From Lytechinus pictus (lineage: Eukaryota): 64,000 nucleotides of DNA. The notes under the pieces were generated by a model that saw nothing but the letters and a program-made list of their open reading frames with translations, did not search any database and was not told the DNA's origin. The DNA lies in NCBI RefSeq assembly GCF_037042905.1, contig NC_087261.1, positions 23,188,001 through 23,252,000 of the forward strand, written 5' to 3'. A program made the translations under genes and the position numbers. Positions 3,463 to 50,979 of this stretch are shown here, one piece after another; the stretch's first letter is position 1; every line of letters starts with the position of its first letter.

Positions 3463-4458
3463 CATCAGTCGTGCTTTCACCAGTCAAGTTTGGAGTGTTC
3501 AGTGTTGAGAATTTTACTGAAAGACAAGAAGCAAATTATTCGTAACAAAATATAAGTTTTACAAGAGGGGAACTTTCAAGTGCATAAACAAAAATAATAC
3601 CAAAGTGGTAAATGTAACAGGAATGAAAACCTAATCATAAATAGACCTATCTATGTTTTCATGACGATGTGTGTACTTGTACAAATTTTATTAATACAAT
3701 AAATATAACAAAATCACTATTTTTGGTCCTTGAAAGGGAACTACGTATTTTGGTTTGTTTATGGATTTTAAGGAAATGAATGGGTAGTATTAGAAATCAC
3801 ACCTTGATACACAGCGCTGAAGTTTATCCCACCACAAAATTGTTGGTCGTCCTGTAGGCATGGTAACCCGCATCTATTATCTGGGACCTTTTTATCAAGG
3901 CATGTATCATTGCACGAACAGGAACATCTAGATCCATTATAGACGAAGGCCAGAAGGTACCCGATTTCTCCGCATCTGGATGAGCACGATTCGGGCGTGG
4001 TCCAACTGTTTTCTGGAAGGCTGACGTTGTACTCCATGTTCAAGCATACAGTTTCGTAGCAACCAAGGTAATCAATATCTAAAAAACGTGGGAAAATTTG
4101 AGATTGTAATAATCATCTAGTTCTCTTGCATTATTGGATGCGGAAACACAAGGAAGACTTAATAACAACAAGTTAGCTATCGATTGTTCCACAGCTTACA
4201 AATCAGTGGGCATTTAAGATAATGAAAATAAAAATGAAAATTTACTACTTGGGCGTGTTTTTTTTTTCCTTCTTCTTTTTAATCATTAGGTCTAACATCA
4301 GACAGAAAATAGGTAAAAACAAACGATAACGATCACTTACCATTCGCTATTTCGTTTCGTCTATCTCCTGTACAATTGGAGATTGCGAAACCTTGACCCA
4401 ATGGAGAGACTTGCACAAACATACATGATAAGTAAAGTAAGTTTAGTGTTCCAATCAT
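3463..4458 (-). CDS. WSC-domain receptor-like gene A (partial: signal exon, WSC exon, stalk exon; no TM/tail exon in window)
   Basis: Exons 4458-4341 (MIGTLNLLYLSCMFVQVSPLGQG.., donor G|GTAAGT), 4078-3803 (DIDYLGCY..CSSRC..CSCSC..CGLPC..FCGG..AVYQ) and 3516-3463 (VKFSTLNTPNLTGESTTD, donor G|GTGAGT). All GT-AG and phase 1. Start uncertain because in-frame ATGs exist further upstream. Confidence 0.85.
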
Positions 4459-4626
4459 TTCGACATGGAATACAATTACCATAATGTACTGGGAAAGTTG
4501 TCTCCTTATGAAAATGTTAAGTTTTAAAGATGGGCTCATGTCGTTCAAGTAGTCTCGCTGAACGCAGTGGCGTGGACTTCTTCTCGTTCATCATATTCAT
4601 ATTACTCTTTATTAACCATTTATGGC

Positions 4627-4742
4627 TATATATCAAAATATGTTTCGGTTCGAAAGTTGCAATTACCCTCCTTCAAATTATTTAGAACAATGATACATCT
4701 TAAGTGACTGTGAAAGAAAACCAAAGTCAAGTGGGAATTTCC
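4627..4742 (-). promoter_or_regulatory. Putative promoter of gene A: TATATA (4632-4627) and a consensus NF-kB site GGGAATTTCC (4733-4742)
   Basis: Exact match to GGGRNYYYCC about 100 bp upstream of a TATA-like box that lies ~170 bp above the ATG. Confidence 0.55.
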
Positions 4743-5420
4743 GGTAGACGACAAATACAAATCAAAACAAATTTTCAGTAAGGCAAAATAGAATTGAAAA
4801 AAAGGCGATTATACGCATCAAAAGATTATCCTAAAATAGAATTATGTCAGAATTAATGAGTGTTATTACATTGATTGACAATTCTAATGAAAAAAAAAAC
4901 AGTGGTGGCGGTAATATGGTTATAATGCTGTTATTGTATATCGTTTCATATCTCCCTTACAAATTATCATTCACCTCTGCCACAAAGAATACACATTATC
5001 ATTATTTTTTTTAATCTCTCTCTCTCCCTCTTTGTCTTTATTCTCGACATTCTGAAGCAGAACACACGTTTCAATTCCCCATTATAGATATAACGGATAC
5101 TGAGATTTAACTGACCAAATGATGGTTATTTTTTTAAAGGGAATCTGGGTTTTTAGAGTAAAGTTTGAAAGTGTCAACCCCACTGAAGACAATACAGTGT
5201 CCTACCATGGAGCTATTAGTGTGTTCACAGTTTGGAACACACTGTGAGATCCCCTTTCACACTGTTAAAGTTGAGCATAACAAAGTGACTCGCATTTTCG
5301 CACAGTCAACCATGTGAACACGTTAATGTGAACAGTCACACTGTCGAGGAGTCCACAGTGTAAACATATTTCCACACTGTTGAAATTAAGCATTTGGACA
5401 AACAAAGTGTTCATTGAAAC

Positions 5421-5650
5421 AGAGGGTCGTGGGTTCGAATCCCAGCCATGGTGTAATTTCCTTCAGCAAGAAACTGATCCGCAGTGTGCTGCACTCAACC
5501 CAGGTGAGGTAAATGGGTACCGGTAGGAATTACTCCTTAAAAAGCTGTGTGCGCTATGAACGCCTAGCTTAGCCGGGTAATATAGGAGCGCCTTGAGCAC
5601 ATAACAAGGTGGATATATTCGCAATATAAATACCCTATATCATTATTATT
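5421..5650 (+). mobile_element. tRNA-derived SINE (5'-truncated) with L2-like tail
   Basis: B-box GGTTCGAATCC; core gcactcaacccaggtgaggtaaatgggtacc shared with copies at ~50.5 kb and ~59.5 kb; ends agcgccttgagcac..tataaat..(att)n. Confidence 0.8.
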
Positions 5651-6039
5651 TTTTTTTATAGGTCCACTTTGGGAACAAAGTGTGACACTTTGTTCTTACC
5701 AGCCGGAAAAATTATGTCAGTATGTATTATTAAGGAGCGTGAGGGACATACTAATATTAATATAGATATTATAATTTTGTATTATATTGAATTAATTATC
5801 ATCTTATATTTAGGAGTATAACAATATGATCAGCTCTTCAGTGAAATATTTATCATTTACCAATTGATGATCATGTTAAAAGTGAGCATAACGTACGCTT
5901 TTATAGTTTCATGAGTAGACGTACTGAATATTTTTAACAGTATAGCGCTAGTATATTGATTGGCAATTTTTGCACCTCATTTTTTGATACGTATATATTA
6001 TTTTTTTCAAACACGCTATAAATTATAAATGTATTCCTG

Positions 6040-6293
6040 GGGCCCCGTCTTATAAAGAGTTACGATTGGTCCGATCAATCACAGTTATAGAAAGATATCA
6101 ACCCAACATCTGAAATTCATGCTTGTTCAAAATATTCATACATACATTGTTTTCTTTAAAATTCAGTGTGCTTCTCTTTGCTTACAAAGGACAATGTACA
6201 AATTTCCTGTGGAAAAAAAGTATGACATTGATGGATTTCCATTATAGGTGAGGTTGATCGTATCGATCGTTACTCTTTGTAAAGACGGGGCCT
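6040..6293. mobile_element. MITE (PIF/Harbinger-like termini)
   Basis: TIR GGCCCCGTCTTATAAAGAGTTACGAT / ATCGTTACTCTTTGTAAAGACGGGGCC; non-coding interior. Confidence 0.8.
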
Positions 6294-7449
6294 TGGTTAT
6301 TATGTAAGTTTCCATGCAACAAAGAGCAGTACTCTTGATCATAACCGAATAAGTGGAAAGATACTTTAATGTGAAAATAAGTCATTGTTATTGGTAAGGA
6401 CAAAGTACAATTAACAGTCAAAAGTGGTTTATGTGAGTTTATATGATGTTACATCCAATAGGAGTTAATTCTTACACTATTAGGAATCAGGAAAAGCAGA
6501 AATTATCACGCATTGTTAATATATTTCTAATATGAATATATTGGTGTATTTGCAACATTGATGTAGCTCCATTGTCGTGCTATCTAGGTGTTTAACTGTT
6601 ACTACGCTCTTAATATTTGATAAAATTTGTCTATAGTTATCTAAAATCATCCAACTTTGCGTATCACTATTGCAATTCATCATGTTGTGACGTAGAGCAT
6701 ATATGAAATAATAACATGCTTCGTTTCTATTTCATATAAATAATAATGTACAATGGACTAAGGGATTTGAGGTTACCACGCACATAAAAGGCGTCGTCTT
6801 TAAAAGCAAGTGTTGTATTCATGTTTGACAAAAATCAGATGTGATAGACTATACATTAGTTGTCGTGCATAATATTGGTGCATTGATTATTTAAAATTCC
6901 CCTGAAAAAATCTGCATATTTCAAAAATGCAAATACTAGTATATAAAAGTCATGATTTAACATAAGGTCAAAGGGTTTTAAAAACTACTGTGTATGTTTA
7001 TCTACAGGGGTTGGAAAGGCGGGGGGGGGGGTAGATAAATCAGCCTTTTTGGAACACTTTTGTAATCCACAGACTGGGACATGCCATAAAAAAAAAAAAA
7101 ATTATGTAGACTTTAATAAGTAGGAACGGTGTATATTACCGGGGGCATAATTCTCAAATGAATTTGCAAACTCGATTGCTATGACTTTTGCATTGCATGG
7201 GTTTAGTTTGGTTTTTAATGATTGATATCTTCATGGACAAAGTGGATAGTGTGGCAATAAGTGGACGGGCTTTCTACCAAAAGACGATACCCCACTGCGG
7301 GATTCGAAAACAAGTCAAATGATTAAAGAGAAACCCCAGAACTGCCTTAATTCTAGTGGACGCGATGCGAATATTAGAAGGCTTTGGATATGTCTTTAAA
7401 AGGCGGATATTAATCTTTAAAAGAAGGAGTGGGAAGTTTTGAAGAATAA

Positions 7450-10400
7450 TTATTGCCCATCAGATTGCGAGGCTGCTAAACGGTTAGAACACCATGGCTT
7501 AGGAATTCTCGAAGAATAGTACAGGCCATGAGGAGAAGGAGGAGTTACACCCGGGCGGTTTGGAATAATGTACCCATCTTCCTCTTCCAGAATATCTTCC
7601 TCATCCTTGGACACTGATTTGATAGGATTTGCATAAGGCATGTAAGTGTACTCATGGAATTCGTCCGGAGTAGTGGTACGTGTAAAGGATAATTTTGTAG
7701 TTGGTTTCGGAGGCGGTTTAGGGCGTTCGACAGGTCCGGCTTCGGCGTAATGGTTGTTTTCTAGCTGATCCCCCGAATGGTCGTGCAGTGCCGGAGTGTT
7801 GGCAATGCCAGCACCAAGGACGCCAAGGCAAATTGGAGTGGGAGGTTGGTTTAGCCCCTGATTCTGTTCACGTTTGTGTGACTTTCCGCTACGGCCTTTG
7901 CGTGATAAGATCCGTCGCTGAAGAGGGACCGCTGTGGCGTCTCCACGAACACTACCAAGTCGCTTACGAATCAGAATGGCGCCAATGATTACCAGGATAA
8001 ATATGCAGACTGTAGGAATAGGGATCAGGATGAGAAGCCGTCTAGATTCCCCTGGCCCTTTAGAGGACAAAACACAAAACGGGAAGAAATAAAGTTCTAT
8101 AAAATCTCTCTCTGGAAAACTTAAGCAGTGTGTTTATTTTACACTATAAACACGATGTATAAAGGAGGCTAATATAAAATAATAGTCAATATTCTCAAAT
8201 TTTCAAAAAAATTGAACAGTAGGATAAGTGCAATAATGTACAGATCCATAAAAGATGAGCGCTTTCCGGTGAACGCACCGTCAACATTCATTACCCCGAG
8301 TGGTTCGGAAGCTGATCACCTTTTCATACAACATACCATATAATATTAAGGCGAGCAAGTAAGAATCCTATGGACCATATGAATATCCTATAAGACAACA
8401 TTAAAATATCATGTATACAGAATATTAGAAATAATACGATGTTGATCGTGCAGGTTTTAATAAAAAGTGAATCATGAGCAAAAGTCGTTATGAGCCCCCC
8501 CCCCCCCTCCCCCCACCCCTCAGAATACGCACGTAATTACGCCTGCGTTTGAAATAATGAAAGTCAGAAAGGGTACTTGCAATCACTACCATATCATGTC
8601 GCATGCATGCTTGCCACCCCCCCCCCCCCCCCCCCCCCCCCCTCACGCCGAAGAAAACTTTTTACCTTTACAAGTTTGCAATTATTCTTTCATTTATTCT
8701 GGAATAAAAGGAAACTTGTAAAAGTAAAATTTTCTTCGGCTTTTCTTCACTTGTTATCTGCATTATACACATACATGTACACACACACACCCTCACCCCC
8801 CACACACACCCAGACACACATCCTCACACACACACACACACATATATATTTATTCATAAATTACATACGCGCCTTGCTAGACACATAAGGATTATGTCCC
8901 TCTCTAAAAAGCCCGAAGAGGAGGTGTCGGTAACAGTTCATTTTATAATTATTACGAATAAGATCGTAATAACATTTATAAAACGGGCCAAGATCACACT
9001 TTTGTTTCTACCCTGCTAAATCACAATTTCAAGTCAGTGAATGAGATGCATGATGTATGCAGGAGATGTCCACTTAAAGCTTCGTCGTTATCAACTGGTT
9101 CAATTTACTAATAATTTTAGAGGAAAGCTTTTTCAAAATTAAAATAATCTCAATAATAAATATATAAATTAACATAAATATGCATTTATGAATAAATAAA
9201 TAAATATAACAACATTAAATAGATAGATTAACAAAAAAGTGGATGTATTTAAAGCACACTTTCAGTTCCTTTAGGCACTTTGAAATCATTCCTACCAGGA
9301 TCACGATCATCATTATTGTGGTTACGGCACTTGCTGTTCGATGTGTTTTCCGAGGTAACTGAAGAATAAAGAAGAACAAAATGACATGAATATACACATC
9401 TAATATGATAAGCAATCTAGTTGAGAGGCATCTGGGAAATGAATTCCAAAACACTAAAACAACTGATATGACAACCAGGTGATGGATTACATCGTGTTGA
9501 ATGTATATAGTGAGATACATGTCCTGCCCAAAAGAATTACATCCGTAATGAATATAGTTACAAACTTGAAAGTCGCTTATAATGAAAATATTAACATATA
9601 ATGATAAAAAAATAAGTACACGGACTGTAGAGACTGTTAAAAACAGAAGAGCTTACAGAAAAATGTTATTGTTAAAACATTTTTTTTTCGAATTTCATAA
9701 CAGGNNNNNNNNNNNNNNNNNNNNNNNNNNNNNNNNNNNNNNNNNNNNNNNNNNNNNNNNNNNNNNNNNNNNNNNNNNNNNNNNNNNNNNNNNNNNNNNN
9801 NNNNNNNNNNNNNNNNNNNNNNNNNNNNNNNNNNNNNNNNNNNNNNNNNNNCAACAGCTTCGGCAACTCTTTTATTTAAATATTGTGTGAAAGAAATGAT
9901 TGAAGAGAACAATGGTAGGCGTAGCTTAAATCAAGGTTCCCCAGAGCTATCTACCCTTTGGAAAATTGGAAATATATATATATATACACCACAAAAAAAG
10001 TAAGTCCCCCCTAAATCAAATTGATTTAACTTTTGAACGGAATAATTTTGAACTATGATATTTCGTAGGTGGTTTTCTACACTCATTAGGCAACTCCTGG
10101 GGGAAAAAATGAGATTTATCGGTTGAGTCATGCATGAGTAATCAAAGATTTATTAAAAATGACCAGTTTTGAAAGTCACAAGAGTCGTTTTTTAGATTGT
10201 GTAAATACAAAGTTGGGCAAAGGTTGTTTTTAGGTGAATTTTATGGTGTTAATGCTGTTTTAATATCCATCATTTAGCCAAACTCACACAAATATTTGAT
10301 ATCGTATGTTTATGGTTGAGTGAGCACAATGTTTTGTGACGTATCATCATATGGGTTTATGGCAGTATCCCCTACAACGTGTTAAAACATGTTAACATTT

Positions 10401-13400
10401 GAAAATGTTGGTTGCTCCCCCAATTACTAGGCCCCTCCCCATTCTAAAATTCTGGATCCACCACTGATTTGTCAGTAAATTCAACTGATCCTGAGAAATT
10501 GTTAGGAAAAAATACATTTATGCAGTATAAAGAGTATTCATTCCCAAGTTTTTTAATGTGCTCGCTCAACCATGAAAATGTAAAGAGTTCGGAAAATGTG
10601 TGGTGATAAAACTGATGAATGATAAAAACAACAGCAATTAAGTCACATTTGAAATCGAATTTGCCCCCATTATTCACTTTATTACCCCTCAAAATGAGTC
10701 TGTGACATTGAAAATGCCCCCTTTCCCACTTTGATGCAAGCTCACTCATCCATAAAAAACATATCGATTTCATTTGTGCACAGATTTCTGCCCGTAGGTT
10801 GATAAACATAACTGCCAAATGACATTGCTAAAGACAGCCTCAAAAAAAAAGTTCCACCATAATGAATAAGGGGTCACCTATTCTTAAACATATGCACCCA
10901 TAGTGTACAGAATGTCTATGAGAGAGGAAGTCAAAATTTTAACAAAATGAAATGAGGGTTTGTTTTAAGGACGGTTTTTGTTACTTTTGCCAACAATTTT
11001 TTAATGAAACTTCGCACATGGCTTCAGATTGATACTATCCAAAAGGCTCGCACACCAAAATAATCATTCGATACGGCACAGAGAGGGGCCAAGGCCTGAA
11101 ACTTTCTTCTCATTTGCATAATTTTCTAATATTGTTTGCTCACTGGAGCATTAGACATTGGGATTTTTACAAAATCAAATCAAATGAACTATGCAAGGAG
11201 GTTTGTGATAAATATCCATAGTTACAAATTGCATTTTTCCCAATAACGTAAAAAAAGAGCTTATCACATTCCACATGTTCATTCAAGCGTGAATGTTTAA
11301 TTAAACGCATTTGAATCATTGAAGCATGGTAATTGGTCATGAACATTACGAAAAAAGTTGAGAAAAGATAATTTTAGTTACCAAAATGAAACAATACTTG
11401 CCTATGATATTTGAAATTCGTATTTTTTGCTTTAATTAAATGTTCATTGATCCGTGAAACGATGAATATTGTTGAAGATACTCTTCCCAAAAATAAATGC
11501 CATCATATTCGATCATTTTTATCGATAGAAATGTGTAAAAAATCAAATTATAGCAAATTTTACCTTGTGTTTATTCAACCGTGAAATTTAGCCAAAAACT
11601 TATATTGTCTTTTAGAAAGTACCTTTCACAAGCTTTCTGACTATTTTTTATGATGAGAATGTGAAATTCGTTCCAATAAAGTGGAATCAAAATCATGATA
11701 TTTGGCTTGTGACTTTTGAAAAGTGACAATTTTGCCTTCTGACGGTGCTCACTGAAGCATTACGAAAAATACGTCCATAACATTTACTCTGAGGGTAGCT
11801 TATAAAATTACCTACACGCTCATGTAAAAATATATTAAAAACTCGCTTTGGTTCGGAAATCATGGATGTTTGTTTAAGGGGGGACTTACTTATTTTGTTG
11901 TGTATATATATATTTATGTATATAAATACACATATTTATATATGTATATGCATGCGCGTCGTGATGAACCAGTTAAGTTCCTACATCACAGATAATTCTC
12001 TCCATGATACATTCCAGTCTGCCTATCGTGCCAATCATAGTGTCGAGACAGCAATCCTCAGAGTCCAGAATGATCTACTTTCCGGCATGGATCAAAAGAA
12101 GATATCGCTTCTAGTCCTACTTGATCTTTCAGCAGCGTTCGACACTGTCGACCATGATATTCTTCTCCATCGACTTAGTGACCTATATGGAATCAGCGGA
12201 GTCGCACTACAGTGGTTTCGATCGTACCTGACAGGAAGGACGAGCTATGTTTCCGTTGACGGTGCCAGATCCGACTCATCAACGCTGAAGTATGGCGTCC
12301 CTCAAGGCTGTGTCCTCGGCCCGCAGTTGTTCAGCATGTACACTTCGCCCATATCTCACATCATCAATAGGCACGGACTCCAGTATCACCGATATGCAGA
12401 TGATACACAGATTTACTGTACCGTCAACTCATCTCAAACTGAGGTCAATTTAGGACTTCAGCGCATTGAATCCTGTGTAGCTGACCTCCAGGAATGGCTG
12501 TCTAATAACTATCATAAGATGAATAAGGACAAGACGGAATTCCTTGTTGTGGGATCTCGTCAACAACGAGCCAAAGTTACAATAAACCATCTAAGAACTG
12601 GCAACTCTTTAATCAAGCCTTCTGATCAAGTGAGAAACCTTGGAGTAGTGTTTGATTCCTCACTTACAATGGAGCAGCATGTCACAGGCACTTCCAAGGC
12701 TGCCTGTATCTCTATCCGTAATCTTGGAAGGATCCGCAAGCATGTAACTAAGAAAGTTGCTGAACTCCTTGTTCATGCCTTTGTAACAACCCGACTGGAC
12801 ATTTGCAACTCAATTTTGACTGGTTTGACTCAACATCAACTGCACAGACTTCAGCGTCTGCAGAACATGGCCGCACGTCTTGTGTCCCTTCAAAGAAAGA
12901 GAGTCCACATTACTCCAATTCTGCGTGACCTACATTGGCTGCCTGTCAACCAGAGAATAGCCTATAAACTTGGGGTCCTCGTATTTAAAGCGCTTAACGA
13001 TAAATCTCCACCCTACATATCAGAGCTCTTATCTCAGCATAGACCAACACGCAATCTCAGATCAGCAGATCAAGCATTGCTGACAGAATCTCTCAGCCAC
13101 ACAACTTGGGGTGACAGAGCCTTCTACATCTCTGGACCAAAGCTGTGGAATAGCCTTCCTCAATTTATCAGGAGAGCAGAGACCCAATCAACTTTTGAGT
13201 CTTACCTGAAGACTTTTCTGTTCCCCACTCCAACATTATTGCAAGAATAACTCAATTGTAGCATTACTAGGACAGTACTTGAACTGAATGACGATCCTAA
13301 GCACTGTTTAAAGACATTGAAATTTGTGAGATATTTCCTATTTTTGAGCAAGCGCCATGAGCGCCCAGCTGAGGCGGAAACCGGCGCTATACAAGAACCC

Positions 13401-28275: not shown

Positions 28276-28277
28276 TA

Positions 28278-31857: not shown

Positions 31858-32374
31858 TTACAAGGCCAACCGGTTCACGAACTCTCACAGTGATGCACTC
31901 GTCATTCTTGGAACCATGCAACTGCACAACCACGATGCGCCCCAGTTTATGAAGTGAAGATATTTTGTCGGAAATTTCATTTTGGTGTCGCTAGAGATTG
32001 TGCTGCACTGTGAAGTCAGAACCCACTTTACTAATGGACAAGACCCGGGGATTAGAAAGAAATATTAGGACAATAATAATAATAATAGAAATAATAATAA
32101 ATAATAATAAGCGGTTCTTAGAGACGCGTAATACCGTGTCAATAGTCTCTATGCGTGTAGAAGAATTGCTGTTTTCTATAGGGCTAATACATGTGTTTCT
32201 CAAAGAGATATGTTTGAACACAGATTTGAATCTGTTGAAATCTTTTATTGATATTATAATATGAGGCAGATTGCCACCCCCCCCCCTCCCCCCCCCCCCC
32301 CCAAAAAAAAAAAAAAAAAAATATCCCATTAGTCCGGCAAGTGGTCCACGACTTTATCATGGGTAAACATTTAT

Positions 32375-34435: not shown

Positions 34436-34722
34436 TTTATTTTGTAGGCATTCTAATTTGGCCTTTTTCACCTCTCTTTGAACCATATTTCTTAATAACT
34501 GTTTGATTTTTTTTTAGGTGACATGCGGATAAAGAAACAGCAAAGTAGTAATGAATGTAGTCTTTGTAGTGGATTATAAAACTATCGTGAAGAAATATTA
34601 AACAAGAAGTGAATGTTTTTCTATCCGATTTATCCATTTATATTATCTTTTCATTATAAACGGAGCCAATTACAGACATGACAGAAGTCGATTATGTCAG
34701 TTATTGGCAGGAAAACAACAAT

Positions 34723-37700
34723 CTAAGTCCCTCCTTGTTCGTGAATGCGGGATGAATAATAGGCAACTTGTCGTCCACAAGGTTCATCTTTAACAGGAGG
34801 TGTGGTTATTTTAGATGAATAGTATACTTGTGAAGGGATGCCTTGGAGAGGCTTACAAGTATCACTTTCTGGTTTGGTTATTCTGGTGGAATAGTACAGT
34901 CTTTGAGGAAGTGGAGGAGTTGGGGTAGGATCCGTAGGGGTAATGTATCCATCTTCATTTGCGTGACTGTCATCCCCATTTATAGAGTTCGGTTTGATAG
35001 GTTTTGCGTAAGTGTACTCGTGATACTCGTCCGTCGAGCTTTTCTTGGACGGGTCTGACGGGGTTCGATGGCTATGTGGTGATTTCGGGTCAAGTCTAGG
35101 GTGATCAGCTTCTTCGTAATAGTGGTTTAGCAGATCCTCTGGAAGGTCGCGACGTCCTGGATTCGGCACATACGCAGCATCAGGGACAGGAAGGCTACCG
35201 GAAGTGGGTGGCTGATTTAGCCCTTGATACTGTTGATTAGGTTTATGTGACCGTCCACGACCGTCCTTGCTAGTTAATGGCTTTTGCTGAACAAAGACCG
35301 CTGTGGCGTTTCCACGAACGTTTCGCAGTCGCCGACGAATCAGTGCGGCACAACTAATTGTTACGAAGACAGCTATGCATACTGCAGGAATAGTTATTGG
35401 AATAACAAGACTCCGGTTTTCATCGTGCCCATCAGTAATTATTGCTAAAAAAAAAGGGGAAAATATGTAAAAAATAGTTAAATAAAGGATTTATGGAAGA
35501 AATAAATGTTGTATTACATTTGCATATTTTGGATATAATTGTCTTGAAACATTATTATTAATATACGTGTCACTAACTGTATTAATATTGTTATTATTAT
35601 TAATTATTATTATTATTACAGTTATTATTATATCTATATTATTCTTTTATTTGGGGGGGTTACATAATTAAATGATTTTTTTTACTTATTCATAAGCTAC
35701 TAAGTGCATTTACATTTTCCTTACCATTTTGATGTTTTTGTTTAATATAATGAGTATATCGATCACATATACATGAGAGATAAAAGCACCAATCAAATTC
35801 GCGATACTGGTTCATTCGGGTGTTCTTGAATCATCATAATTCTCAACAAATTCATGTGTTTATGCATCGGCAACACGACATGCCCTTTTATAAATTCAAT
35901 TTACAAACAATCGTGATGTACAAGTTAACCAATAATAATACATGTATGTCGTCTATCATTAGTGAAATTTAAACGCGCTGTATCGACGTCTGTGGAATTA
36001 ATCATTCCATGGCAGTAATTCGGAAATTAATCTTTTATTATTTCTTACCATTCTGATCTGTTGACGGTCCATTCTTACCCGTCCCCTCAAGCTTAATATG
36101 TAGTGGAGAACCACATTCCTCACTCGAGTTGATATAAACTGTAAGAAATAAATATGAAAAAAAGTACTTTCATATTATAAGTGTATGTAATTCATTCAAA
36201 AGATAGGAAAAAGAAAATGGTGAGCTTAATCAACTCGGGACGAAAAAAATGATATTACAATCCGTCCCTTTGGAGCGGTAAAAGTGTAAATATTAGGAAT
36301 CTGTTTAGGATTTCTCCAAAAATCAAATTCAAACATCTTGACGAACGTTTCATCAATAGTTCTGTCCGACAAGTTTTCGGTTCTGACAACTTTCTTTGAT
36401 TTTGATTTGATGAGAAATGGTGTTATCATGGTGCACATGTATTGTCATTCGACTTGCAGGCTGATACTTTACCATGTTCCTTTCATGCTTTTCTATATTT
36501 TTATGGAAATAGATTATTGTTTATTATTACTATTACTCTGATGATGTATTAAGCATTATATAATTATGGAATTAATCCTTGTTTACATATATATATTTTT
36601 TTTTAGGGGGGGGAATCCACAAACAAAATTTGCCTTACCGGTATATAGAGACACAGAGTTAAAGCTTCCACAGAACATGCCGGAGTCTCCCAGACAAGGC
36701 ACGCCACAATACGTGTCTGGCAGCGGCTTGCTCCTACACGTCTGCTGGCATAAGCACGAACATTTCGAGCGATTGAAGACACCGGCCAAAGGAAATCCAC
36801 TTTCTTTACATGCTTGTGTGCAGGACCCTGGAGTTACTGTGATGTTGGAAAGTAAGTTGACGACGTGGTGGAATTGTAAGCATCCGCGGTCATAGCAACC
36901 GATGTATTCCCCATCTGTAAATTAAAAATATACATATATTATCATGTACACATGCATTTATCATTTAGGGTTATTATTCCATTTAATCGAATTCATTTGT
37001 TAATGTCATTAAGAGTCATTTCATTTCATGCTCATTCTTTTTTCTTTCTCTTTATCTCTTTCTTCTTGTCTTCCTTTCTTGCTATTGATTCTTTTTTTTT
37101 CTGTTGATTAATTAGTGGGCACACTGTAAAAACTGTGGTGTTAAAACTGACACCAATTGGTGTTAATAGAGGACCACACCCTGAGGTGTTAAAATAACAC
37201 CCTAGAGATTGAACATAACACCAAAGAGTGTAAATGTAACAACCATAGGTGTTGTAATAACACCTAAAACTAGCACCACCAATTTAACACCGGTGTAAAA
37301 AATAACACCACAGTTTTTGCTGTGCATAGTCCGACAGGCATAGTAGGATTAATGTACAGTAAAAGAAAGATAATTGTTATTTAGTCAGATATTTGTTTAG
37401 TTTGTTATTAAAGGCCAAATTTATTTTTGCGACAATGATGTGCTTTATTTATGTATTTTATGATATTTTTTATTATAATACTACGAATACAACATCATCT
37501 CAGAAATAATGAGCTTCTCACCAGATTGGTTGGATTGTTAATGGCATGTTATGTATTTGAGAAAGGTTTATTTGTTGTTGTTTTTTTCAAAGGAACTTAT
37601 AAAACATTCACACAATATTGATATGTTTTACTAAAGCCTTTAGTGCACCAGCAAAGCTGAACATTTTCGAGCAATCAGCCACAGATTCGCTATCGCTATT

Positions 37701-37971
37701 ACCCACATTACTTCTCGATATGCATTGGTGTCTATACAGCATAATGAATGTTTGATCCCATTATATCTTAGCAGCATAATATTGTGTAATTAAGTTATTA
37801 TTTTGGTATACTAAAGTACTGCAGAAAATTAATATTTAATGGTATATACCCCAAATATATAAATACGTAAATACATGTATACTCACATTCAGCACTATAT
37901 TTCGAGTCGCTGCCGCCACTAGATCCAATAACGTGACTTATCAAAACAATGGGAATAACATACATCTTCAT
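34723..37971 (-). CDS. WSC-domain single-pass receptor-like gene C (~380-390 aa)
   Basis: Exons 37971-37887 (MKMYVIPIVLISHVIG.., donor T|GTGAGT), 36914-36639 (WSC GEYIGCY..CTQAC..CSCLC..CGVPC..FCGS..SLYT), 36138-36049 or 36138-36079 (stalk) and 35444-34723 (TM LVIPITIPAVCIAVFVTISCAALI-RRR; tail HYYEE, HEYTY, EDGY, three YYS[ST][RK]I). All phase 1. TATATAAA at ~38120-38113. Confidence 0.88.
37122..37324. mobile_element. CACTG-terminus MITE in intron 1 of gene C
   Basis: Same family as 28014-28231, with CA duplication. Confidence 0.85.
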
Positions 37972-39528
37972 TTTAACTACGCGATATTTCGAAGAAAATG
38001 AGGGAAGGTAGTTTTTAAAAAGATGCCAACACGAGTTCGATTGATTACCATAATAGTCTAACCAAAACTGGCGCAAATCAATATAAAGTCCGTACAATGA
38101 GGATATGTGGTATTTATATACCTAGGCTCATCATCTTGACAGAAGTAAGATTGTTCTGTAATTTGCGTTTCCCATCATCAATGACTTAAAGTATGTGAGA
38201 TGATAAAGCATTTCATAACCGGGGGGAGGGGGGGGGAGAGGGCAGAAACTTGGGGTGACAACATTTTGTTTACAAATAAAGAAGACCCTTTGCTGTTATG
38301 CATGTTGCCTTTTAAAATAATTGCAAAACGGGGTTTCCATAATACCCCACATTTAAAACATATTATCAGAACGAAACGTAGTTACAAGACGGAAAGGGCT
38401 CTTAATATGGTAAATTTAGCACAACATTCGGCCAGGGCGAGAGGTACGTACCCCCTCTCCCCTTTCGCCTACCCACACATGAAAGTAGTCGAGAGGTTCC
38501 AGGCCACTTATGTTCAGTAAACAAATTGAATGAATGCGAGATTAATCACCATTATTGTTAATCAAGGATCATTACAAGTTTCGATCAACAATTAATTTTA
38601 ATCAATCAGATTGTTTAAGTGTATAATAAAGACATGTTCGATTTGGTAATTGCACGGTCCTTTATATCACGTGGTTCACAAAAGGTTTTTCTCGAGATAA
38701 AACTTCAAATATAATTTGTGAATAATCTTTTAAACCATGTTTGCATGATTTGTGTAACCCCAATTAAACCGCTTGTTTATATACAACACACATCGTCACA
38801 CATCGTGCACTATAGCACACATTCACACTAACTGACTATTACAAAGTGTCACTTGGGGTCCATTTAAAATTTGACCTTCAACTAGGCTGGTTTTCAGACT
38901 TAATAAACAGAAAAAAAAGTGAGCATAATGCTGTTTCTGTGTGAAATATGATGATCAATATATTGCCTAGTGTTCGGAAAATTAATCTGGACAGGGGACA
39001 TCCCTGATGGTTGGGCGCTCCTGGTTAGTTTCTTGAATTTAAAAAATTGCCCCCCCCCCCCCAAAGAAAAAAAACCGAGCTTTCCCTCCCCACATAAACA
39101 CGCACTCCCACCCCACATACACACGCACACCCATACACGAGGAAATGTTTCTCCATACCATTATACTTATTAATCTTAGAAGGACAAATTAAGACAATGG
39201 CATACAATCCATAGAACCATGATAACGTTTTGTAAAATATGCTATGGATATCTCTTAAGATATATTTTGTGTCGGAAATATATAGATGATGTTAGTCTAG
39301 GCATTTATTTGTCAGATGAAGGGAGTGATTGAAAGTGAGACTCATTTATAGTTTTATTAATTAAGTTCAGGGCCATTAGATTCTGACACAATGGGCTTGG
39401 TGAGAAATAAAATCATTATAGAGTGTAATTTGCTTCCCGCTTACTCTAGTTGGTTTCAAATTCAAGACCTTACCATTATTAGGTGAAATTACCAAAAAAT
39501 AAATTAGTATAAAAATTGTGTTCATTTT

Positions 39529-39673
39529 CATAATCATCAGCATCATCATCACTGTCAACATCATCATCATCATCATCCTCATCACCATAATCATCATTAT
39601 AATCATCATCGTCATCATCATCATCATCATCACAATAATCATCATTATCATCATCATCGTCATTATCATCCTC
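39529..39673. repeat. Imperfect (CAT)n microsatellite
   Basis: catcatcat.. run; explains the spurious poly-M/D/I ORFs. Confidence 0.95.
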
Positions 39674-40451
39674 CTTATGTTTGTTTTGATAAGAAAAAAA
39701 AGAATGGCAATGTCCCTGGAATAAAAAAAAGTTGTACGTCAATGTGAATCAAAATCAGAAAATTATTTTTTGTATTGTAATGAGGTCCAATTTTATACAT
39801 TCATATTTGTTTTATTTCTTAACTACAATTTCTAATTTGCTGGTCATTTTTATAAATGCAAACTTTTAATAAGTATGCTGCTTGTTGCAGGAAATGATCC
39901 TCTTGTAATGCCCAGAAAAGACTGCCTATACGAGCCCTTGGGTTCACTGCATGGTGACCCAAAAAAGATAGATGAATACAAGTTTTCGTTTTAATAAGGA
40001 CAAACATGTAACAAAAGTTTTGTGTAGATACCAATACAGAGCTTTCTGTTTCTTCTACAGGTTTCTTCTATAAGAAAACGGTGAACAATATCAGCTCCCT
40101 TTTGCTAGGCAATGTACAATTCACCATTCCGCTTACCAAAAATGCAAGGTTAGGACCGGCAGTAAACTTAAGATCCAGTGTATGGAAGAGTGCAAAATGT
40201 TATACATTTATATAAATATATATGTATATAGTGTGATGATAAGTTTACTTCTACCAATCGCTGTAGAGTTGTGAATATTAAACATAAATGAGATGACTTT
40301 CCTAAAGAACGAGATAGGATACGGTCATACTTAACTATCACAATAGTCTGTAAATACAGACGCTTCTGACGAAGTCTCAATTAAAAGACGAAAGCTAAAG
40401 CAAATAATGGTGTCCTGCGTCATCTGTTGAGTTGGCCTCGCCTCATCTCAT

Positions 40452-40452
<1 letters not shown>

Positions 40453-40518
<66 letters not shown>
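40453..40518. repeat. (TA)n microsatellite
   Basis: Direct reading. Confidence 0.95.
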
Positions 40519-40522
<4 letters not shown>

Positions 40523-40645
40523 TTTATATCAACTGTGTAAATACTTCTGTACTTAGGTCCTCACTCACAGGTACGTACACTCTGGTTAATAGCGTTTATT
40601 CTGTTCTAAGCATGACATATTATCAATCAGTTCTTCGCGACGCCG

Positions 40646-43600
40646 TCATTCTATTACTTCGTCACTATCAGTTTTGGAGTATAATTCTAACGTTTGATTT
40701 CCTGAACCTGCTGAACGATGTACGTTCCTTGAATAGTATACTTGCATGTTCTCGACGTCGAGTGAATCTTCCAATTTTGCTCCACCGATCGGTGCAGGGT
40801 CATTTTCATTGGCATATGCTTTTGAAGGTTCGTCTTTCATATCACATTTCGGTAAACGTGAAGAGTAATAGACCTTTGGCGTAGGATTCGGCACGGGATG
40901 TATGTCAGGTTCTGCCAAAAGGTATCCATCCTCAGCAATCCTGTTCACCCTCGCAGGACCTTTGAATTGACTTCGCTCGAGCTTGGGGTAAGTATACTCG
41001 TGGATCTCATCAACAGAGGGAGTACTTCTTACAGGATCCCCTTGACCTGAGTCAAGGTACTCGTGGCCCAGGGCGATGCCAACCGAAGGTACAGAACTTT
41101 CTACAAAGTCCGGCTCATGGTAGATTCTTTCCTGTAATACATCATCCGATGTTGGCGTTGGTTGCACAGCTTCTTTCGGAATGTTCGGCAGTTCCGGCAT
41201 TATCTTTGGAGGCTTGGATTCTCCTTTTAGGGGAACTTCTTCTTGAATTGTCTTACCATGGACACCTATTCGGTAACGATCATTGACAGTTGCTTGTCTG
41301 TCTGCTCTGCTTGTGTCTTTCACTGAAAGGGGCCTTTGCGCGGCGTGCTTTCGTCGACAATATACCAATATACCAACAGCAACAGACAGTAAGACAAGTG
41401 ATACTGCAGTGCAGACTGGTATGATGATTGGAACACGTAAATCTGAAGGAGAATCTATATACATGTAGGAAATAAACAAACAACAAAATAGTAAAATGAA
41501 AAAGGAGAGGACCGTAAAGTATGCAAATGTGTATCATCGTTTTGTCTGACAATTTACCTACCCCCCAAAAAAAAATCGACAAGTTGTACATTAAATGAAT
41601 GAATAAATAAACACATAATAAATAAATAAATGAATAAATACATGAATAAATAAGTGAATAAATGAATGAATAAATAAATAAATAAATAGGTAAATGAAGC
41701 GAACTAGACTGAAGAGGAAATAATAACAATAACAGTTAAAATGAATAAAGTGGTGTATTTATGAGTCAAAAGTTAATCTTATTCTACTCTGTATATACAA
41801 GCAGATGGAATATAACCACTGATAAAGGAGAACAGGAGGTTCATTGAATAATACATCAAGAGCTGAGCGACTGATATGGTGTTGCGATGTCAATCATAAG
41901 TCTTACTATTAATTGTCAATTTGTTACTGATCGCTTGTCTTATTTTTAATCAACAAGTATGAAGTGATTGGCTTTCGTGAATATTGATGTTTCACTAGTT
42001 CATTGGCAACTTACCACTTGACTGGATATTGATAATCTTGATTGTAGACATCCTCTCGTTACTCTGGTCGAAGGGGTTTTTGCAAATAATGTTCAATGAT
42101 ACCGAAGCGTTCACTGCAAGTAAGAAGAAATAACAAAAAAAAATCAATTCTAGATTAGAAGCACTATCAATAGACTAGGTCATAATTGTATTTCGCGCAT
42201 GAACAGAAACGTCGTTTGAATTTTGATATCCAAGGTGGGCCACAAAGTGAATGACAGTAGTAGATATTTTAATGATGATCAAACTTGTCCATTAAATTGT
42301 TAAAAAATACTTATTTTTAGCTAAATCTACTGAAAAGCAACATCTGAAAATATCCCCAAGAACATGGACCTACTAGTAGGTCCGTGCCAAGAATAACCAA
42401 CGTGCCAACGGTGCCAGAGTAATAGCATATTTCCAAATTCGATCACTGACGTATCATTGTAGCCATATTCTCTCTCAATTTGAAAAGCGTTTGTTTTTTA
42501 TCCTAATCTGCTAATGAAAATAGGCCGCATGCCATGTAATAAAATTTGGTCATGGGGCAACCTAGACATTGCTGTCATGCTCGAAACTGAAGATAACGGA
42601 TAATAACATGAATTGTGGTGATTCAAATTCAGATTCGAGAACATCAATATGAATATTGGTGGATACTACTGATATTACTACTGATAACAATACAACGAGA
42701 CCCATCATTACGATCATTATATTTGAAATCAAACATCTGTGATAGATGTTTGATACCGATTGGATGAAAAGCAGTGTTAAAGAAACCTACATTTTACATT
42801 TAAAAAAAGATTTTGCAGAGAGCAATAACAGAATCATTCTGTAAATTCTCAAAACAGGAACTTTTCTGCAATTTAACAGAACAGGACTGTTTAAAAAAAA
42901 AAGGAAAATTATGTTTTATTTCAGGAAATGTGTAGGATTCCATACATCAAATACATATTTTCTGTAATTTTACATGAAACAATGTAAGATCTGGTATTGA
43001 TTACAGGTGGTCTCGAGACTCTGCTGCAGGAACTTTTTTAAGGATATATTTTCTAACAGTGTATGTTACAATTATATTATTGCTGTCAAGTATATCAGTT
43101 ACAGGGATTTCTACTTATTCTATTTTTTGTCTGTGCGTTACCTTTGTAAAGAGACATGGTTCTGTACCCTCCACAGAAGCTGTCCCGGTCTCCAATGCAG
43201 GGGACACCACACCGGCTGTCTTCCAGGGACTTGCCAAGACATCCTTGTTCCCCATGAGGACAGGAGCAGGAGCACTCTACCATGGAGAGAATGGCGGCAA
43301 AGGCAAACCCTCTTTCCTCGCAGGCTCTACTGCAAGTATTTGGAGAGTTCATACGCTTGTCTTTGAAGGTAACGTTGTAATCTTGGTCCAGGCAGCCGAT
43401 GTTGTAGCACCCGACGTAGTCCCCGACTGAACAAAAACAAAATACCACAGTATAGCACATCTCATTTTTTGTGACGAATTCTTCAAACGATAAGGCCTAG
43501 AGGTATTTAGCAAAGCTGAACAGCCAAAAATGTCAAAACGTATCTGCATGTCGAATTTCCGGGGGGGGGGGTCAGGAGCCCAAAGGTCATACATCATATT

Positions 43601-43946
43601 GAACTTTTTTGTTCGTATATAAACGCACGCATTAAACGCATTAAAATGACTTCCCTGTTACTTTCCCCCAACATGCCTTTCTCTAAAGGTCTTACGTTAC
43701 ACACATCCTACTGTAATTATGGACACTACAAACAAATCCCTGAATAGTTTGACATGAAGCTTCAGCGAGATAGAGAGAGAAAAAAAATAATAAACTGGTA
43801 GAAATTACAAAATTGATACAACTCCTACCTAAGGAACATCGGCCATCGCAGTTCGAATTGTCATTCTCACTTGTAGAATTTTCCTTTTGGCTTCTGCACA
43901 GTGGAATTAAGATGAAATATAAAATTCCTATCAGCAAAGTATCCAT
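40646..43946 (-). CDS. WSC-domain single-pass receptor-like gene D (~436 aa)
   Basis: Exons 43946-43829 (MDTLLIGILYFILIPLCRS.., donor G|GTAGGA), 43426-43142 (WSC GDYVGCY..CSRAC..CSCSC..CGVPC..FCGG..SLYK), 42113-42015 (stalk) and 41454 (or 41442)-40646 (TM IIIPVCTAVSLVLLSVAVGILVYC-RRK; tail IYHEP, HEYTYPKL, EDGYLL, VYYSSRL, VYYSRNV). All phase 1, total 1311 nt. Confidence 0.88.
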
Positions 43947-50641: not shown

Positions 50642-50979
50642 NNNNNNNNNNNNNNNNNNNNNNNNNNNNNNNNNNNNNNNNNNNNNNNNNNNNNNNNNNN
50701 NNNNNNNNNNNNNNNNNNNNNNNNNNNNNNNNNNNNNNNNNNNNNNNNNNNNNNNNNNNNNNNNNNNNNNNNNNNNNNNNNNNNNNNNNNNNNNNNNNNN
50801 NNNNNNNNNNNNNNNNNNNNNNNNNNNNNNNNNNNNNNNNNNNNNNNNNNNNNNNNNNNNNNNNNNNNNNNNNNNNNNNNNNNNNNNNNNNNNNNNNNNN
50901 NNNNNNNNNNNNNNNNNNNNNNNNNNNNNNNNNNNNNNNNNNNNNNNNNNNNNNNNNNNNNNNNNNNNNNNNNNNNNNN
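50642..50979. other. Assembly gap (N run)
   Basis: Run of N. Confidence 1.

What the first reader, a model, noticed from the sequence alone, without database searches (positions are those of the whole stretch)
3463..43946. Tandem family of WSC-ectodomain receptors with conserved multi-tyrosine signalling tails: a candidate undescribed innate immune receptor family
Seen: four co-oriented paralogs share one all-phase-1 exon plan (signal / WSC / stalk / TM+tail; the last exon is missing from the window for A). The ORF track only shows them in pieces. The WSC domains differ strongly between the fixed cysteines (roughly 35-45% identical by eye). The three visible tails show no recognisable kinase, TIR or SEFIR domain but keep tyrosine motifs in the same order: [HI]Y..E, DE.HEYTY, EDGY[IL], [LV]YYSSR[IL]. 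Established: WSC domains are Cys-rich modules implicated in carbohydrate binding (yeast Wsc sensors, fungal glucan-binding proteins), and variable ectodomains on phosphotyrosine tails are typical of immunoreceptor families. Inference: a diversified glycan-sensing receptor family that signals through SH2 adaptors. I know of no named family with this architecture.
Basis: partly seen in the sequence, partly recalled or inferred. Interest (0 to 1): 0.88.

Follow-up and report, generated by a model that had tools for sequence, protein, structure and literature searches.

The report
Sea-urchin WSC receptor-like gene family
The window holds four members of a sea-urchin-specific, never-described family of about 30 single-pass membrane proteins. 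Each has a sugar-binding-type WSC domain outside the cell and a floppy tail with conserved tyrosine motifs inside, so a receptor role is likely but an immune role is untested.

Summary
Four minus-strand paralogs (Lytechinus pictus, contig C17) each carry a complete WSC exon that passes Pfam's cut-off. The signal / WSC / stalk / TM+tail plan with all phase-1 introns is shown directly for gene D by spliced contigs in two runs. It is supported for C by the L. variegatus ortholog and inferred for A, whose tail exon lies 6.6 kb outside the window.

Gene B is incomplete. No signal exon was found, its upstream homology is lost, and its WSC-to-stalk intron holds a LINE and the N gap, so B cannot be verified across the gap.

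The four genes belong to a cluster of about 30 family-type WSC exons over 0.8 Mb. The family was found only in sea urchins, always as "uncharacterized" proteins. The tails are predicted disordered, and five of the eight conserved alignment columns are tyrosines in fixed order and spacing.

The WSC domain is the most conserved part, not the most variable (dN/dS 0.10-0.21; 80% identity to the Strongylocentrotus ortholog). There is no ITAM, ITIM or true hemITAM. A glycan-sensing, phosphotyrosine-signalling receptor is the best reading; immune function is only a guess. Two other first-reader notes report WSC/tyrosine-tail genes elsewhere in this genome; I did not check them.

The parts
43829..43946 (-). 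Gene D exon 1: start codon, signal peptide and a short Cys/Asn-rich stretch (118 nt, ends in phase 1)
   Evidence: The joint 43426|43829 is seen in contigs of X1 and X2. ORF and donor.
43142..43426 (-). Gene D exon 2: complete WSC domain (285 nt, phase 1 to 1)
   Evidence: Pfam WSC 37.1 bits. Joints on both sides. AF2 model pLDDT 80, matching the Kremen and yeast Wsc1 WSC structures.
42015..42113 (-). Gene D exon 3: 33-aa stalk with an N-glycosylation sequon
   Evidence: Joints 42113|43142 (X1, X2) and 41454|42015 (X1). The L. variegatus model P0001 begins inside this exon.
40646..41454 (-). Gene D exon 4: TM helix, basic stop-transfer residues and a cytoplasmic tail carrying motifs Y.E, DEIHEYTY, EDGYLL and VYYSSRL; includes the stop codon
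   Evidence: 98% identical to L. pictus LOC129280754 and 93% to L. variegatus LOC121430461. AF2: helix 8-38, the rest disordered.
37887..37971 (-). Gene C exon 1: signal peptide (85 nt)
   Evidence: Candidate scan. Matches the N-terminus of L. variegatus XP_041483818.1.
36639..36914 (-). Gene C exon 2: WSC domain (276 nt)
   Evidence: Pfam 43.2 bits. Ortholog 93% identical at the DNA level. dN/dS 0.21.
36049..36138 (-). Gene C exon 3: stalk (90 nt)
   Evidence: Fast-evolving: 10 non-synonymous against 1 synonymous change.
34723..35444 (-). Gene C exon 4: TM plus tail with three YYS[ST][RK]I copies; includes the stop codon
13601..13882 (-). Gene B WSC exon (282 nt). Homology to the upstream regions of its paralogs stops at 13891.
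   Evidence: Pfam 35.4 bits. Splice sites. Loss of upstream homology.
9705..9851 (.). Assembly gap inside gene B's putative WSC-to-stalk intron
   Evidence: N run. No proposed exon lies within 347 nt. Continuity across it is unverifiable.
9305..9358 (-). Gene B proposed stalk exon (54 nt, the same length as A's). Inferred only.
   Evidence: Splice-site and phase scan. No transcript or ortholog support.
7450..8057 (-). Gene B TM+tail exon with motifs HYAE, DEFHEYTY, EEDGYIIP and LYYSSRI; includes the stop codon
   Evidence: About 75% DNA identity to five paralogous tail exons. No annotated protein was found for it.
4341..4458 (-). Gene A exon 1: signal peptide (118 nt, the same length as D's). 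Inferred.
   Evidence: Candidate scan. In frame with the exons that follow.
3803..4078 (-). Gene A WSC exon (276 nt)
   Evidence: Pfam 38.7 bits. Splice sites.
3463..3516 (-). Gene A stalk exon (54 nt). The TM+tail exon lies outside the window at C17:23180797-23181383.
   Evidence: The off-window exon has a TM segment, RR stop-transfer residues and GEDGYLVP.

Best explanation
These are four members (A, C and D apparently complete, B probably 5'-truncated) of a lineage-specific, tandemly expanded gene family found only in sea urchins.

Shown. Each gene encodes a type I membrane protein made of:
- a signal peptide;
- one WSC domain of a variant type (CxCxC core, 10 invariant cysteines);
- a short, fast-evolving, N-glycosylated stalk;
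- one TM helix;
- a disordered cytoplasmic tail of about 170-230 residues.

In the tail only short motifs are conserved. Their order and spacing are fixed: Y.E, then DE.HEY.Y, then [DE][DE]GY[ILMV] 24-27 residues later, then YYSSR[IL]P a further 19-20 residues on.

Inferred. The WSC domain binds an extracellular glycan, which clusters the receptor. A Src-type kinase then phosphorylates the acidic-context tyrosines, and SH2 proteins dock on them. A PLC-gamma- or SHP-2-type SH2 domain would fit pY-[ILV]-x-P at the DGY site. Which glycan is bound, and whether the pathway serves immunity, development or adhesion, is open.
For: Transcription and the exon plan are shown for D. C and D are intact and share exon boundaries in L. 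variegatus.

Ectodomain. WSC is confirmed by Pfam and by fold: Kremen 5FWU/5FWS, and yeast Wsc1 7PZ2 with TM 0.73/0.71. The cysteine framework is invariant in 19 family members.

Topology. A signal peptide, N-glycosylation sequons in the ectodomain, a confident TM helix and a basic cluster after it.

Tail. No Pfam domain and pLDDT below 60 with no secondary structure. In 14 tails that are 16-41% identical to D's, apart from D's own L. variegatus ortholog at 93%, the only invariant columns are Y112 and D176-G177-Y178. The near-invariant columns are H152, Y154, Y196 and Y197. That makes 5 tyrosines among 8 conserved columns, where tyrosine is about 5% of residues.

Motif order and spacing are kept from Lytechinus to Strongylocentrotus, and the module is duplicated in some paralogs. 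Tail dN/dS is 0.26-0.38.

Precedents. The PDGFR peptide DNDpYIIPLPDPK binds the PLC-gamma1 C-SH2 domain (PMC7337045), and gene B has EEDGYIIP. Acidic residues before the tyrosine are needed for phosphorylation of the CLEC-2 hemITAM (PMC3576117). An amphioxus LRR+WSC membrane receptor is tyrosine-phosphorylated by Lck (PMC8211107).
Against: - No phosphorylation, binding or ligand data exist.
- No canonical ITAM, ITIM or ITSM in B, C or D.
- Y+3 of the DGY motif is L in only 1 of 21 instances (counted), so Syk-type hemITAM docking is unlikely.
- The YYSSRIP motif has no acidic context and no known reader.
- Expression is low. D contigs have depth 3-6 in X1 and X2, and no reads lie on D's exons in the ~6% sampled of two RNA runs.
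- No run was listed for B, and no annotated protein matches its tail.
- Conserved tyrosines in a disordered tail could also be sorting or docking signals that work without phosphorylation.
Confidence: 0.55

Rival explanations
1. One reading: an innate immune pattern-recognition family. The WSC domain senses microbial glycans such as beta-glucan, and the tails activate coelomocytes or gut cells through SH2 adaptors. This would make it a functional analogue of Dectin-1, possibly co-regulated with the adjacent IL-17 genes.
For: - Tandem expansion to about 30 WSC exons in 0.8 Mb, with very recent block duplications, as in other sea-urchin immune families.
- D's start codon lies 3.1 kb from a divergently oriented IL-17 gene, and there are three IL-17 ORFs in the window.
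- The [DE][DE]GY core equals the first half of the hemITAM consensus DEDGYxxL (PMC11484026), and gene B has EEDGY.
- Precedent: the amphioxus WSC-containing receptor that signals through tyrosine phosphorylation (PMC8211107).
Against: - The WSC domains are under purifying selection, not diversifying (dN/dS 0.10-0.21; 80% identity across genera).
- No ITAM, ITIM or ITSM.
- Only 1 of 21 DGY motifs has L at Y+3.
- No expression data from immune tissue or after challenge. No reads in the two sampled RNA runs.
- No paper links these loci to immunity.
- Adjacency to IL-17 could not be checked in L. variegatus, because the locus ends 3.5 kb upstream of D.
Confidence: 0.25
2. A non-immune surface sensor or adhesion/endocytic receptor. 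The WSC domain binds the animal's own matrix or egg-coat polysaccharides, or acts as a mechanosensor like yeast Wsc1. The tyrosine motifs then serve trafficking, or developmental or adhesion signalling.
For: - The overall plan (signal, WSC, stalk, TM, tail) is that of the yeast Wsc1-3 sensors, and the WSC model superposes on the Wsc1 mechanosensor domain.
- Strong purifying selection on the WSC domain fits a fixed endogenous ligand.
- One-to-one orthologs between genera argue for old, stable functions.
- Animal WSC domains sit in non-immune proteins such as Kremen and polycystin-1/REJ.
Against: - The stalk is 18-33 residues long, not a long Ser/Thr-rich rod.
- The tails show no similarity to fungal Wsc tails.
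- Few motifs fit the YxxPhi sorting signal.
- Heavy recent tandem duplication is unusual for housekeeping adhesion genes.
Confidence: 0.2
3. Partly non-functional array. Some copies, above all B, are gene fragments or pseudogenes left by duplication and transposon insertion. The apparent size of the family is inflated by assembly redundancy.
For: - B lacks a detectable signal exon, and its homology to the conserved upstream of its paralogs stops 9 nt before the WSC exon.
- B's intron carries a LINE reverse-transcriptase ORF and an assembly gap.
- No annotated protein and no listed run for B.
- One WSC exon and one tail ORF in the cluster each carry a single in-frame stop.
- Three copy pairs are 99.3-100% identical.
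Against: - B's WSC and tail ORFs are intact with all motifs.
- C and D are intact in two species with dN/dS of 0.3-0.4 overall.
- D is spliced as predicted.
Confidence: 0.1

Closest known systems
Fungal Wsc1-3 cell-wall integrity sensors (S. cerevisiae Wsc1, PDB 7PZ2)
   Same: Same order of parts: signal peptide, one N-terminal cysteine-rich WSC domain, stalk, single TM, cytoplasmic signalling tail. The WSC model superposes with TM 0.73/0.71.
   Different: The stalk is 18-33 aa instead of a long O-mannosylated Ser/Thr rod. The WSC variant has extra cysteines (CxCxC core). The tail is long and built on tyrosine motifs, with no detectable similarity to fungal tails. An animal has no cell wall. 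Sequence identity is about 22-24%.
Kremen1/2 (Kringle-WSC-CUB Wnt modulators, PDB 5FWS/5FWU)
   Same: Best structural match for the WSC domain (E 1e-4). Also an animal type I membrane protein.
   Different: No Kringle or CUB domain by Pfam. The tail is unrelated.
hemITAM C-type lectin receptors (Dectin-1, CLEC-2, DNGR-1); consensus DEDGYxxL
   Same: A lectin-type ectodomain on a tail with a tyrosine preceded by acidic residues and Gly ([DE][DE]GY, invariant DGY). In CLEC-2 the acidic residues are needed for phosphorylation (PMC3576117).
   Different: Y+3 is P, A or M, and L in only 1 of 21 cases. The protein is type I, not type II. The ectodomain is WSC, not a C-type lectin domain. The motif sits mid-tail among three other tyrosine motifs. 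At most convergent, not a member.
Amphioxus BbLcLRR (LRR + WSC + TM receptor phosphorylated by Lck; PMC8211107)
   Same: An invertebrate-deuterostome membrane receptor that contains a WSC domain and signals through tail tyrosines.
   Different: LRR-dominated ectodomain and an ITIM-based inhibitory tail. No sequence relationship was shown here.
PDGFR-beta Y1021 docking site for the PLC-gamma1 C-SH2 domain (DNDpYIIPLPDPK; PMC7337045)
   Same: Gene B's EEDGYIIPNRP, and the family consensus acidic-x-Y-[ILV]-x-P (11 of 21 motifs), resemble this site.
   Different: A resemblance of a short motif only. No binding was tested.

Membership tests
WSC domain (Pfam PF01822) | Profile match above the curated gathering score over the whole model | tested here: met
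   A 38.7, B 35.4, C 43.2 and D 37.1 bits against the 27.8 cut-off, covering model positions 1-81 or 1-82 of 82.
WSC domain (Pfam PF01822) | WSC (PAN/apple-like) fold | tested here: met
   AF2 model of D's WSC domain: pLDDT 80, pTM 0.72. The top seven Foldseek PDB hits are all WSC domains (Kremen, yeast Wsc1, glyoxal oxidase), with TM 0.66-0.75. The next hit has E above 1.
WSC domain (Pfam PF01822) | Conserved cysteine framework | tested here: met
   10 invariant Cys columns, plus G-x-PC and CGG, in 19 family sequences.
WSC domain (Pfam PF01822) | Carbohydrate binding | not testable with these tools
   Needs glycan arrays or pull-downs.
Fungal Wsc-type sensors | Signal peptide, WSC, long Ser/Thr-rich stalk, TM and cytoplasmic tail | tested here: not met
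   The order of parts is the same, but the stalk exon encodes only 18-33 residues. The tail profile found no fungal protein among 1.84 billion representatives.
hemITAM receptors | Acidic residues plus Gly directly before the tyrosine (DEDGY) | tested here: met
   [DE][DE]GY in nearly all tails. D, G and Y are invariant in 14 aligned tails.
hemITAM receptors | YxxL (L or I at Y+3) for the Syk SH2 domain | tested here: not met
   Y+3 is P 11, A 4, M 2, V 1, Q 1, H 1 and L 1 among 21 motif instances (counted).
ITAM / ITIM / ITSM immunoreceptors | YxxL/I-x6-12-YxxL/I, [ILVS]xYxx[ILV] or TxYxx[IV] in the tail | tested here: not met
   None in B, C or D. There is a single ITIM-like SVYDYL at the C-terminus of A's off-window tail.
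Kremen | Kringle and CUB domains flanking the WSC domain | tested here: not met
   Pfam reports only WSC in full-length family proteins.
The echinoid WSC / tyrosine-tail family defined here | Variant WSC (CxCxC), TM, and a tail with ordered Y.E / DE.HEY.Y / [DE][DE]GY / YYSSR motifs | tested here: met
   B, C and D have all four motifs. A, and the neighbouring gene LOC129280084, keep only the DGY motif and, for the latter, Y.E. They form a divergent subgroup.

The most novel reading that the evidence does not exclude
An echinoderm counterpart of Dectin-1 that arose independently. A WSC lectin domain, a fold that binds beta-glucan in fungi, is coupled to a hemITAM-like acidic-Gly-Tyr motif and further phosphotyrosine sites. 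The family expanded next to the IL-17 cytokine genes, forming a linked sensor-cytokine locus for gut or coelomocyte defence.
Probability: 0.12. Interest if true: 0.85.

Novelty: new variant of a known kind. Interest (0 to 1): 0.55.

Why it matters
Sea urchins are a reference system for how innate immune and cell-surface receptor repertoires evolve. This family is not named in any database or paper I could search.

Public gene models for it are poor. D is split into two genes in L. variegatus and cut to a 184-aa fragment in L. pictus. B has no annotated protein that I could find.

The family gives a compact, testable case of a known glycan-binding fold joined to an unknown set of tyrosine motifs. 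The motifs are conserved across two sea-urchin genera (Lytechinus and Strongylocentrotus) in an otherwise free-drifting tail.

L. pictus is genetically tractable, so knock-outs and Tyr-to-Phe alleles are feasible. If the motifs prove to be SH2 docking sites, they would define new reader-motif pairs outside vertebrates. If the family is immune, its linkage to IL-17 genes would be of real interest.

Tried and rejected
1. Signal and stalk exons by homology. tblastn of D's exons found only the WSC and tail exons of the paralogs.
2. B's signal exon. No convincing candidate. The 4-kb upstream regions of three B-like paralogs are 82-96% alike among themselves but match nothing in the window beyond 13891.
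3. B's tail against 5.8 billion proteins: no hit. Sequencing-run search with B's tail: none listed. Neither result is informative.
4. I first took the 114 or more WSC exons in the genome as the family size and then rejected that. The high-scoring clusters (for example 25.1 Mb) carry canonical ECYCG-type WSC domains of other genes. Only the CxCxC type at 22.43-23.27 Mb, plus a few elsewhere, belongs here.
5. The tail-profile hit to a 3237-aa plant NLR (P0004) is spurious. It is the sum of 19 weak repeat matches.
6. The match of the S. purpuratus SRCR protein P0020 is to half a WSC exon fused to SRCR domains, probably a chimeric gene model. It is not a shared tail.
7. ESM Atlas look-alike search with P0017: best score 0.80, not meaningful.
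8. Literature: no paper mentions the LOC identifiers. No supplements are held for the L. pictus immune paper.
9. IL-17 synteny in L. variegatus: the fetched locus ends too close to D to tell.
10. Raw RNA reads (X8, X9): no reads on D's exons in about 6% of each run. This shows low expression there, not absence.

Full report
Origin. The window is Lytechinus pictus, contig C17 (31,958,207 bp), positions 23,188,001-23,252,000. An L. pictus protein was recorded on a contig of exactly that length. The gene D tail is 98% identical to L. pictus LOC129280754 and 93% to L. variegatus LOC121430461. All four genes lie on the minus strand.

Observation: WSC exons. The four full exons match Pfam PF01822 over the whole model: A (3803-4078) 38.7 bits, B (13601-13882) 35.4, C (36639-36914) 43.2 and D (43142-43426) 37.1, against a cut-off of 27.8. 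They are 40-48% identical to one another. An AlphaFold model of D's WSC domain (pLDDT 80) finds only WSC structures in the PDB at significant scores: Kremen 5FWU/5FWS, the yeast Wsc1 mechanosensor domain 7PZ2 (TM 0.73/0.71) and a glyoxal oxidase WSC. In 19 family sequences, 10 cysteine columns are invariant, including a CxCxC core that sets this variant apart from canonical WSC domains.

Observation: exon plan. Contigs of two public runs (X1, X2) laid on 39800-44400 carry the joints 43829|43426 and 43142|42113. X1 also carries 42015|41454. All have CT..AC ends on the plus strand, which is GT..AG on the minus strand. The four exons give a 1311-nt CDS (436 aa) with every intron in phase 1.

Gene C (37971-37887, 36914-36639, 36138-36049, 35444-34723) gives an intact 390-aa CDS. 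Its signal, stalk and tail exons match L. variegatus XP_041483818.1. That model leaves the WSC exon at an internal GT and so lacks half the domain.

Gene A has a 118-nt signal exon (4458-4341), the WSC exon and a 54-nt stalk exon (3516-3463). Its TM+tail exon is outside the window at C17:23180797-23181383, with a good phase-1 acceptor. About 10 kb of intron, holding a LINE, separates it from the stalk exon.

Gene B and the gap. B has intact WSC and TM+tail (8057-7450) exons and a plausible 54-nt stalk exon (9358-9305). These are in frame only under the phase-1 model. The N run 9705-9851 lies in the intron between the WSC and stalk exons, 347 nt or more from any proposed exon. The same intron holds a LINE reverse-transcriptase ORF (11862-13250). 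Continuity across the gap cannot be tested, and a hidden exon cannot be excluded. Some neighbouring genes may carry two WSC exons.

No signal exon was found for B. The upstream 4 kb of three B-like paralogs is 82-96% conserved among them, but homology to B stops at 13891, 9 nt before the WSC exon. No annotated protein matches B's tail and no run was listed for it. B may be a 5'-truncated copy.

Extent of the family. A profile of the tails finds 14 matches at nine loci in the genome, all on C17 between 22.70 and 23.23 Mb and all on the minus strand. Pfam WSC finds 114 or more exons genome-wide, but many belong to other genes with canonical ECYCG-type WSC domains. The CxCxC type fills C17 22.43-23.27 Mb with about 33 exons, and a few lie elsewhere (C2, C17:9.7 Mb). 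Three copy pairs are 99.3-100% identical. These are either very recent block duplications or assembly redundancy, so about 30 is an upper estimate. In the cluster, one WSC exon and one tail ORF each carry a single in-frame stop.

Some neighbours have divergent tails that keep only part of the motif set. Gene A keeps GEDGYLVP. LOC129280084 keeps HVYAEAD and DADGYVIQ.

Taxonomic range and annotation. Outside this genome, an exhaustive profile search of 1.84 billion representative proteins found eight proteins at E <= 1e-3. One is a spurious plant repeat protein. The rest are from L. variegatus, L. pictus, S. purpuratus or unlabelled assemblies with urchin-like sequences. All named members are 'uncharacterized protein'. 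No paper mentions them, and the ESM Atlas gave no meaningful neighbour. Public models are poor. D is split into a 157-aa WSC gene and a 279-aa tail gene in L. variegatus, although the full four-exon ORF is intact there.

The tail. Pfam finds nothing in the tails. AlphaFold gives a confident TM helix (residues 8-38 of the exon). Everything after the helix has a mean pLDDT below 65 and no secondary structure.

I aligned 14 tails. Apart from D's own L. variegatus ortholog (93%), they are 16-41% identical to D. The only invariant columns are Y112 and D176-G177-Y178. The only near-invariant columns are H152, Y154, Y196 and Y197. Five of eight conserved columns are therefore tyrosine, against a tyrosine content of about 5%.

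The motifs keep their order and spacing from Lytechinus to Strongylocentrotus:
- Y.E comes first.
- DE.HEY.Y follows.
- [DE][DE]GY[ILMV] comes 24-27 residues after that.
- YYSSR[IL]P comes a further 19-20 residues on.

The module is duplicated in several paralogs. B has one YYSSR copy, D two and C three. This is the pattern expected of short linear motifs under selection in a disordered region.

Selection. Between L. pictus and L. variegatus orthologs, dN/dS by exon is as follows:
- D: signal 1.0, WSC 0.10, stalk 0.38, tail 0.26.
- C: signal 0.31, WSC 0.21, stalk 3.0 (10 non-synonymous against 1 synonymous change, too few to test), tail 0.38.

D's WSC domain is 80% identical to its S. purpuratus ortholog LOC105441084, while the cytoplasmic tail is 39% identical. 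The paralogs are therefore old, each has a stable WSC domain, and the ectodomain is the most constrained part. That is the opposite of a rapidly diversifying recognition surface. The stalk is the fast-evolving piece.

How it most likely works. Shown: the proteins are type I membrane proteins with an extracellular disulfide-rich WSC domain and a cytoplasmic disordered tail with constrained tyrosines. Inferred: ligand-induced clustering, followed by tyrosine phosphorylation and SH2 docking.

The acidic residues before three of the four tyrosine motifs fit tyrosine-kinase substrates. The [DE][DE]GY core equals the first half of the hemITAM consensus DEDGYxxL (PMC11484026), and in CLEC-2 those acidic residues are required for phosphorylation (PMC3576117). 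But Y+3 is P 11, A 4, M 2, V 1, Q 1, H 1 and L 1 in 21 instances, so the Syk-binding half is missing. Y+1 is always aliphatic, and 11 of 21 instances read Y-[IL]-x-P. That resembles the PDGFR site DNDpYIIPLPDPK bound by the PLC-gamma1 C-SH2 domain (PMC7337045); gene B reads EEDGYIIP. No ITAM, ITIM or ITSM occurs in B, C or D. These are leads, not tests.

An amphioxus LRR+WSC receptor phosphorylated by Lck (PMC8211107) shows that WSC-bearing phosphotyrosine receptors exist in invertebrate deuterostomes.

Immune role. The evidence is circumstantial. It rests on the tandem expansion and on position next to three IL-17 ORFs: 47036-47557 (+), 54308-54856 (-) and 61235-61759 (-), all Pfam IL17. No expression, ligand or phenotype data exist. 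Two rRNA-depleted RNA runs showed no reads on D's exons in the ~6% sampled. An endogenous-glycan, adhesion or mechanosensing role, as in yeast Wsc1, is about as likely.

Verdict. I rate it a new variant of a known kind: a lineage-specific receptor-like family that joins a known lectin-type fold to an undescribed tyrosine-motif tail.

Noticed in passing
window 47036-47557 (+), 54308-54856 (-), 61235-61759 (-): Three single-exon IL-17 ORFs (Pfam PF06083, 64-75 bits). The first two form a 542-nt inverted repeat, 94% complementary, that flanks a second assembly gap at 50642-50979.
   Followed up: partly
window 42726-43187: This stretch covers the upstream end of D's intron 2 and runs into the last 46 nt of the WSC exon. 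It has very high depth in the contig runs (up to about 720) and the only raw RNA reads, all with loose ends. It looks like a transcribed interspersed repeat, not part of the gene.
   Followed up: no
window 106-2502 (+), 11862-13250 (+), 21659-23266 (-): LINE-type reverse-transcriptase ORFs (Pfam RVT_1). One is in A's last intron, one is in B's intron, and one lies in the 20-kb transposon-rich spacer between B and C.
   Followed up: partly
L019 (L. variegatus CM031031.1) 3493-7584 and 10001-13707: The public annotation splits the D ortholog into a 157-aa WSC gene and a 279-aa tail gene, although the four-exon ORF is intact. The C ortholog model leaves the WSC exon at an internal GT in the conserved 'A-C-K' codons and loses half the domain. 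The S. purpuratus model P0020 likewise joins half a WSC exon to SRCR domains.
   Followed up: partly
G000 C17: 25.11-25.29 Mb, 27.27-27.43 Mb, 29.34-29.99 Mb, 14.27-14.30 Mb, 11.0-11.7 Mb: Further dense clusters of WSC exons. One sampled exon at 25.1 Mb is of the canonical ECYCG type, and most of the genome's 114 or more WSC exons lie on this one chromosome. A 69.8-bit WSC exon on the plus strand lies 9 kb beyond the window's end (C17:23261060).
   Followed up: partly
G000 C17: L035/L039, L042/L046, L005/L006: Family copies 74-228 kb apart are 99.3-100% identical over 0.4-3.5 kb. This is either very recent block duplication or uncollapsed haplotypes in the assembly.
   Followed up: partly
L070 (G000 C2:23686000-23695999) 2328-2648 and 4774-5121 (+): Two family-type (CxCxC) WSC exons in tandem on another chromosome. 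The tail was not in the fetched stretch.
   Followed up: no
window 39376-39742: A long ATG/ATC-type microsatellite that gives poly-Met/Ile and poly-Asp ORFs, in the D-C intergenic region.
   Followed up: no
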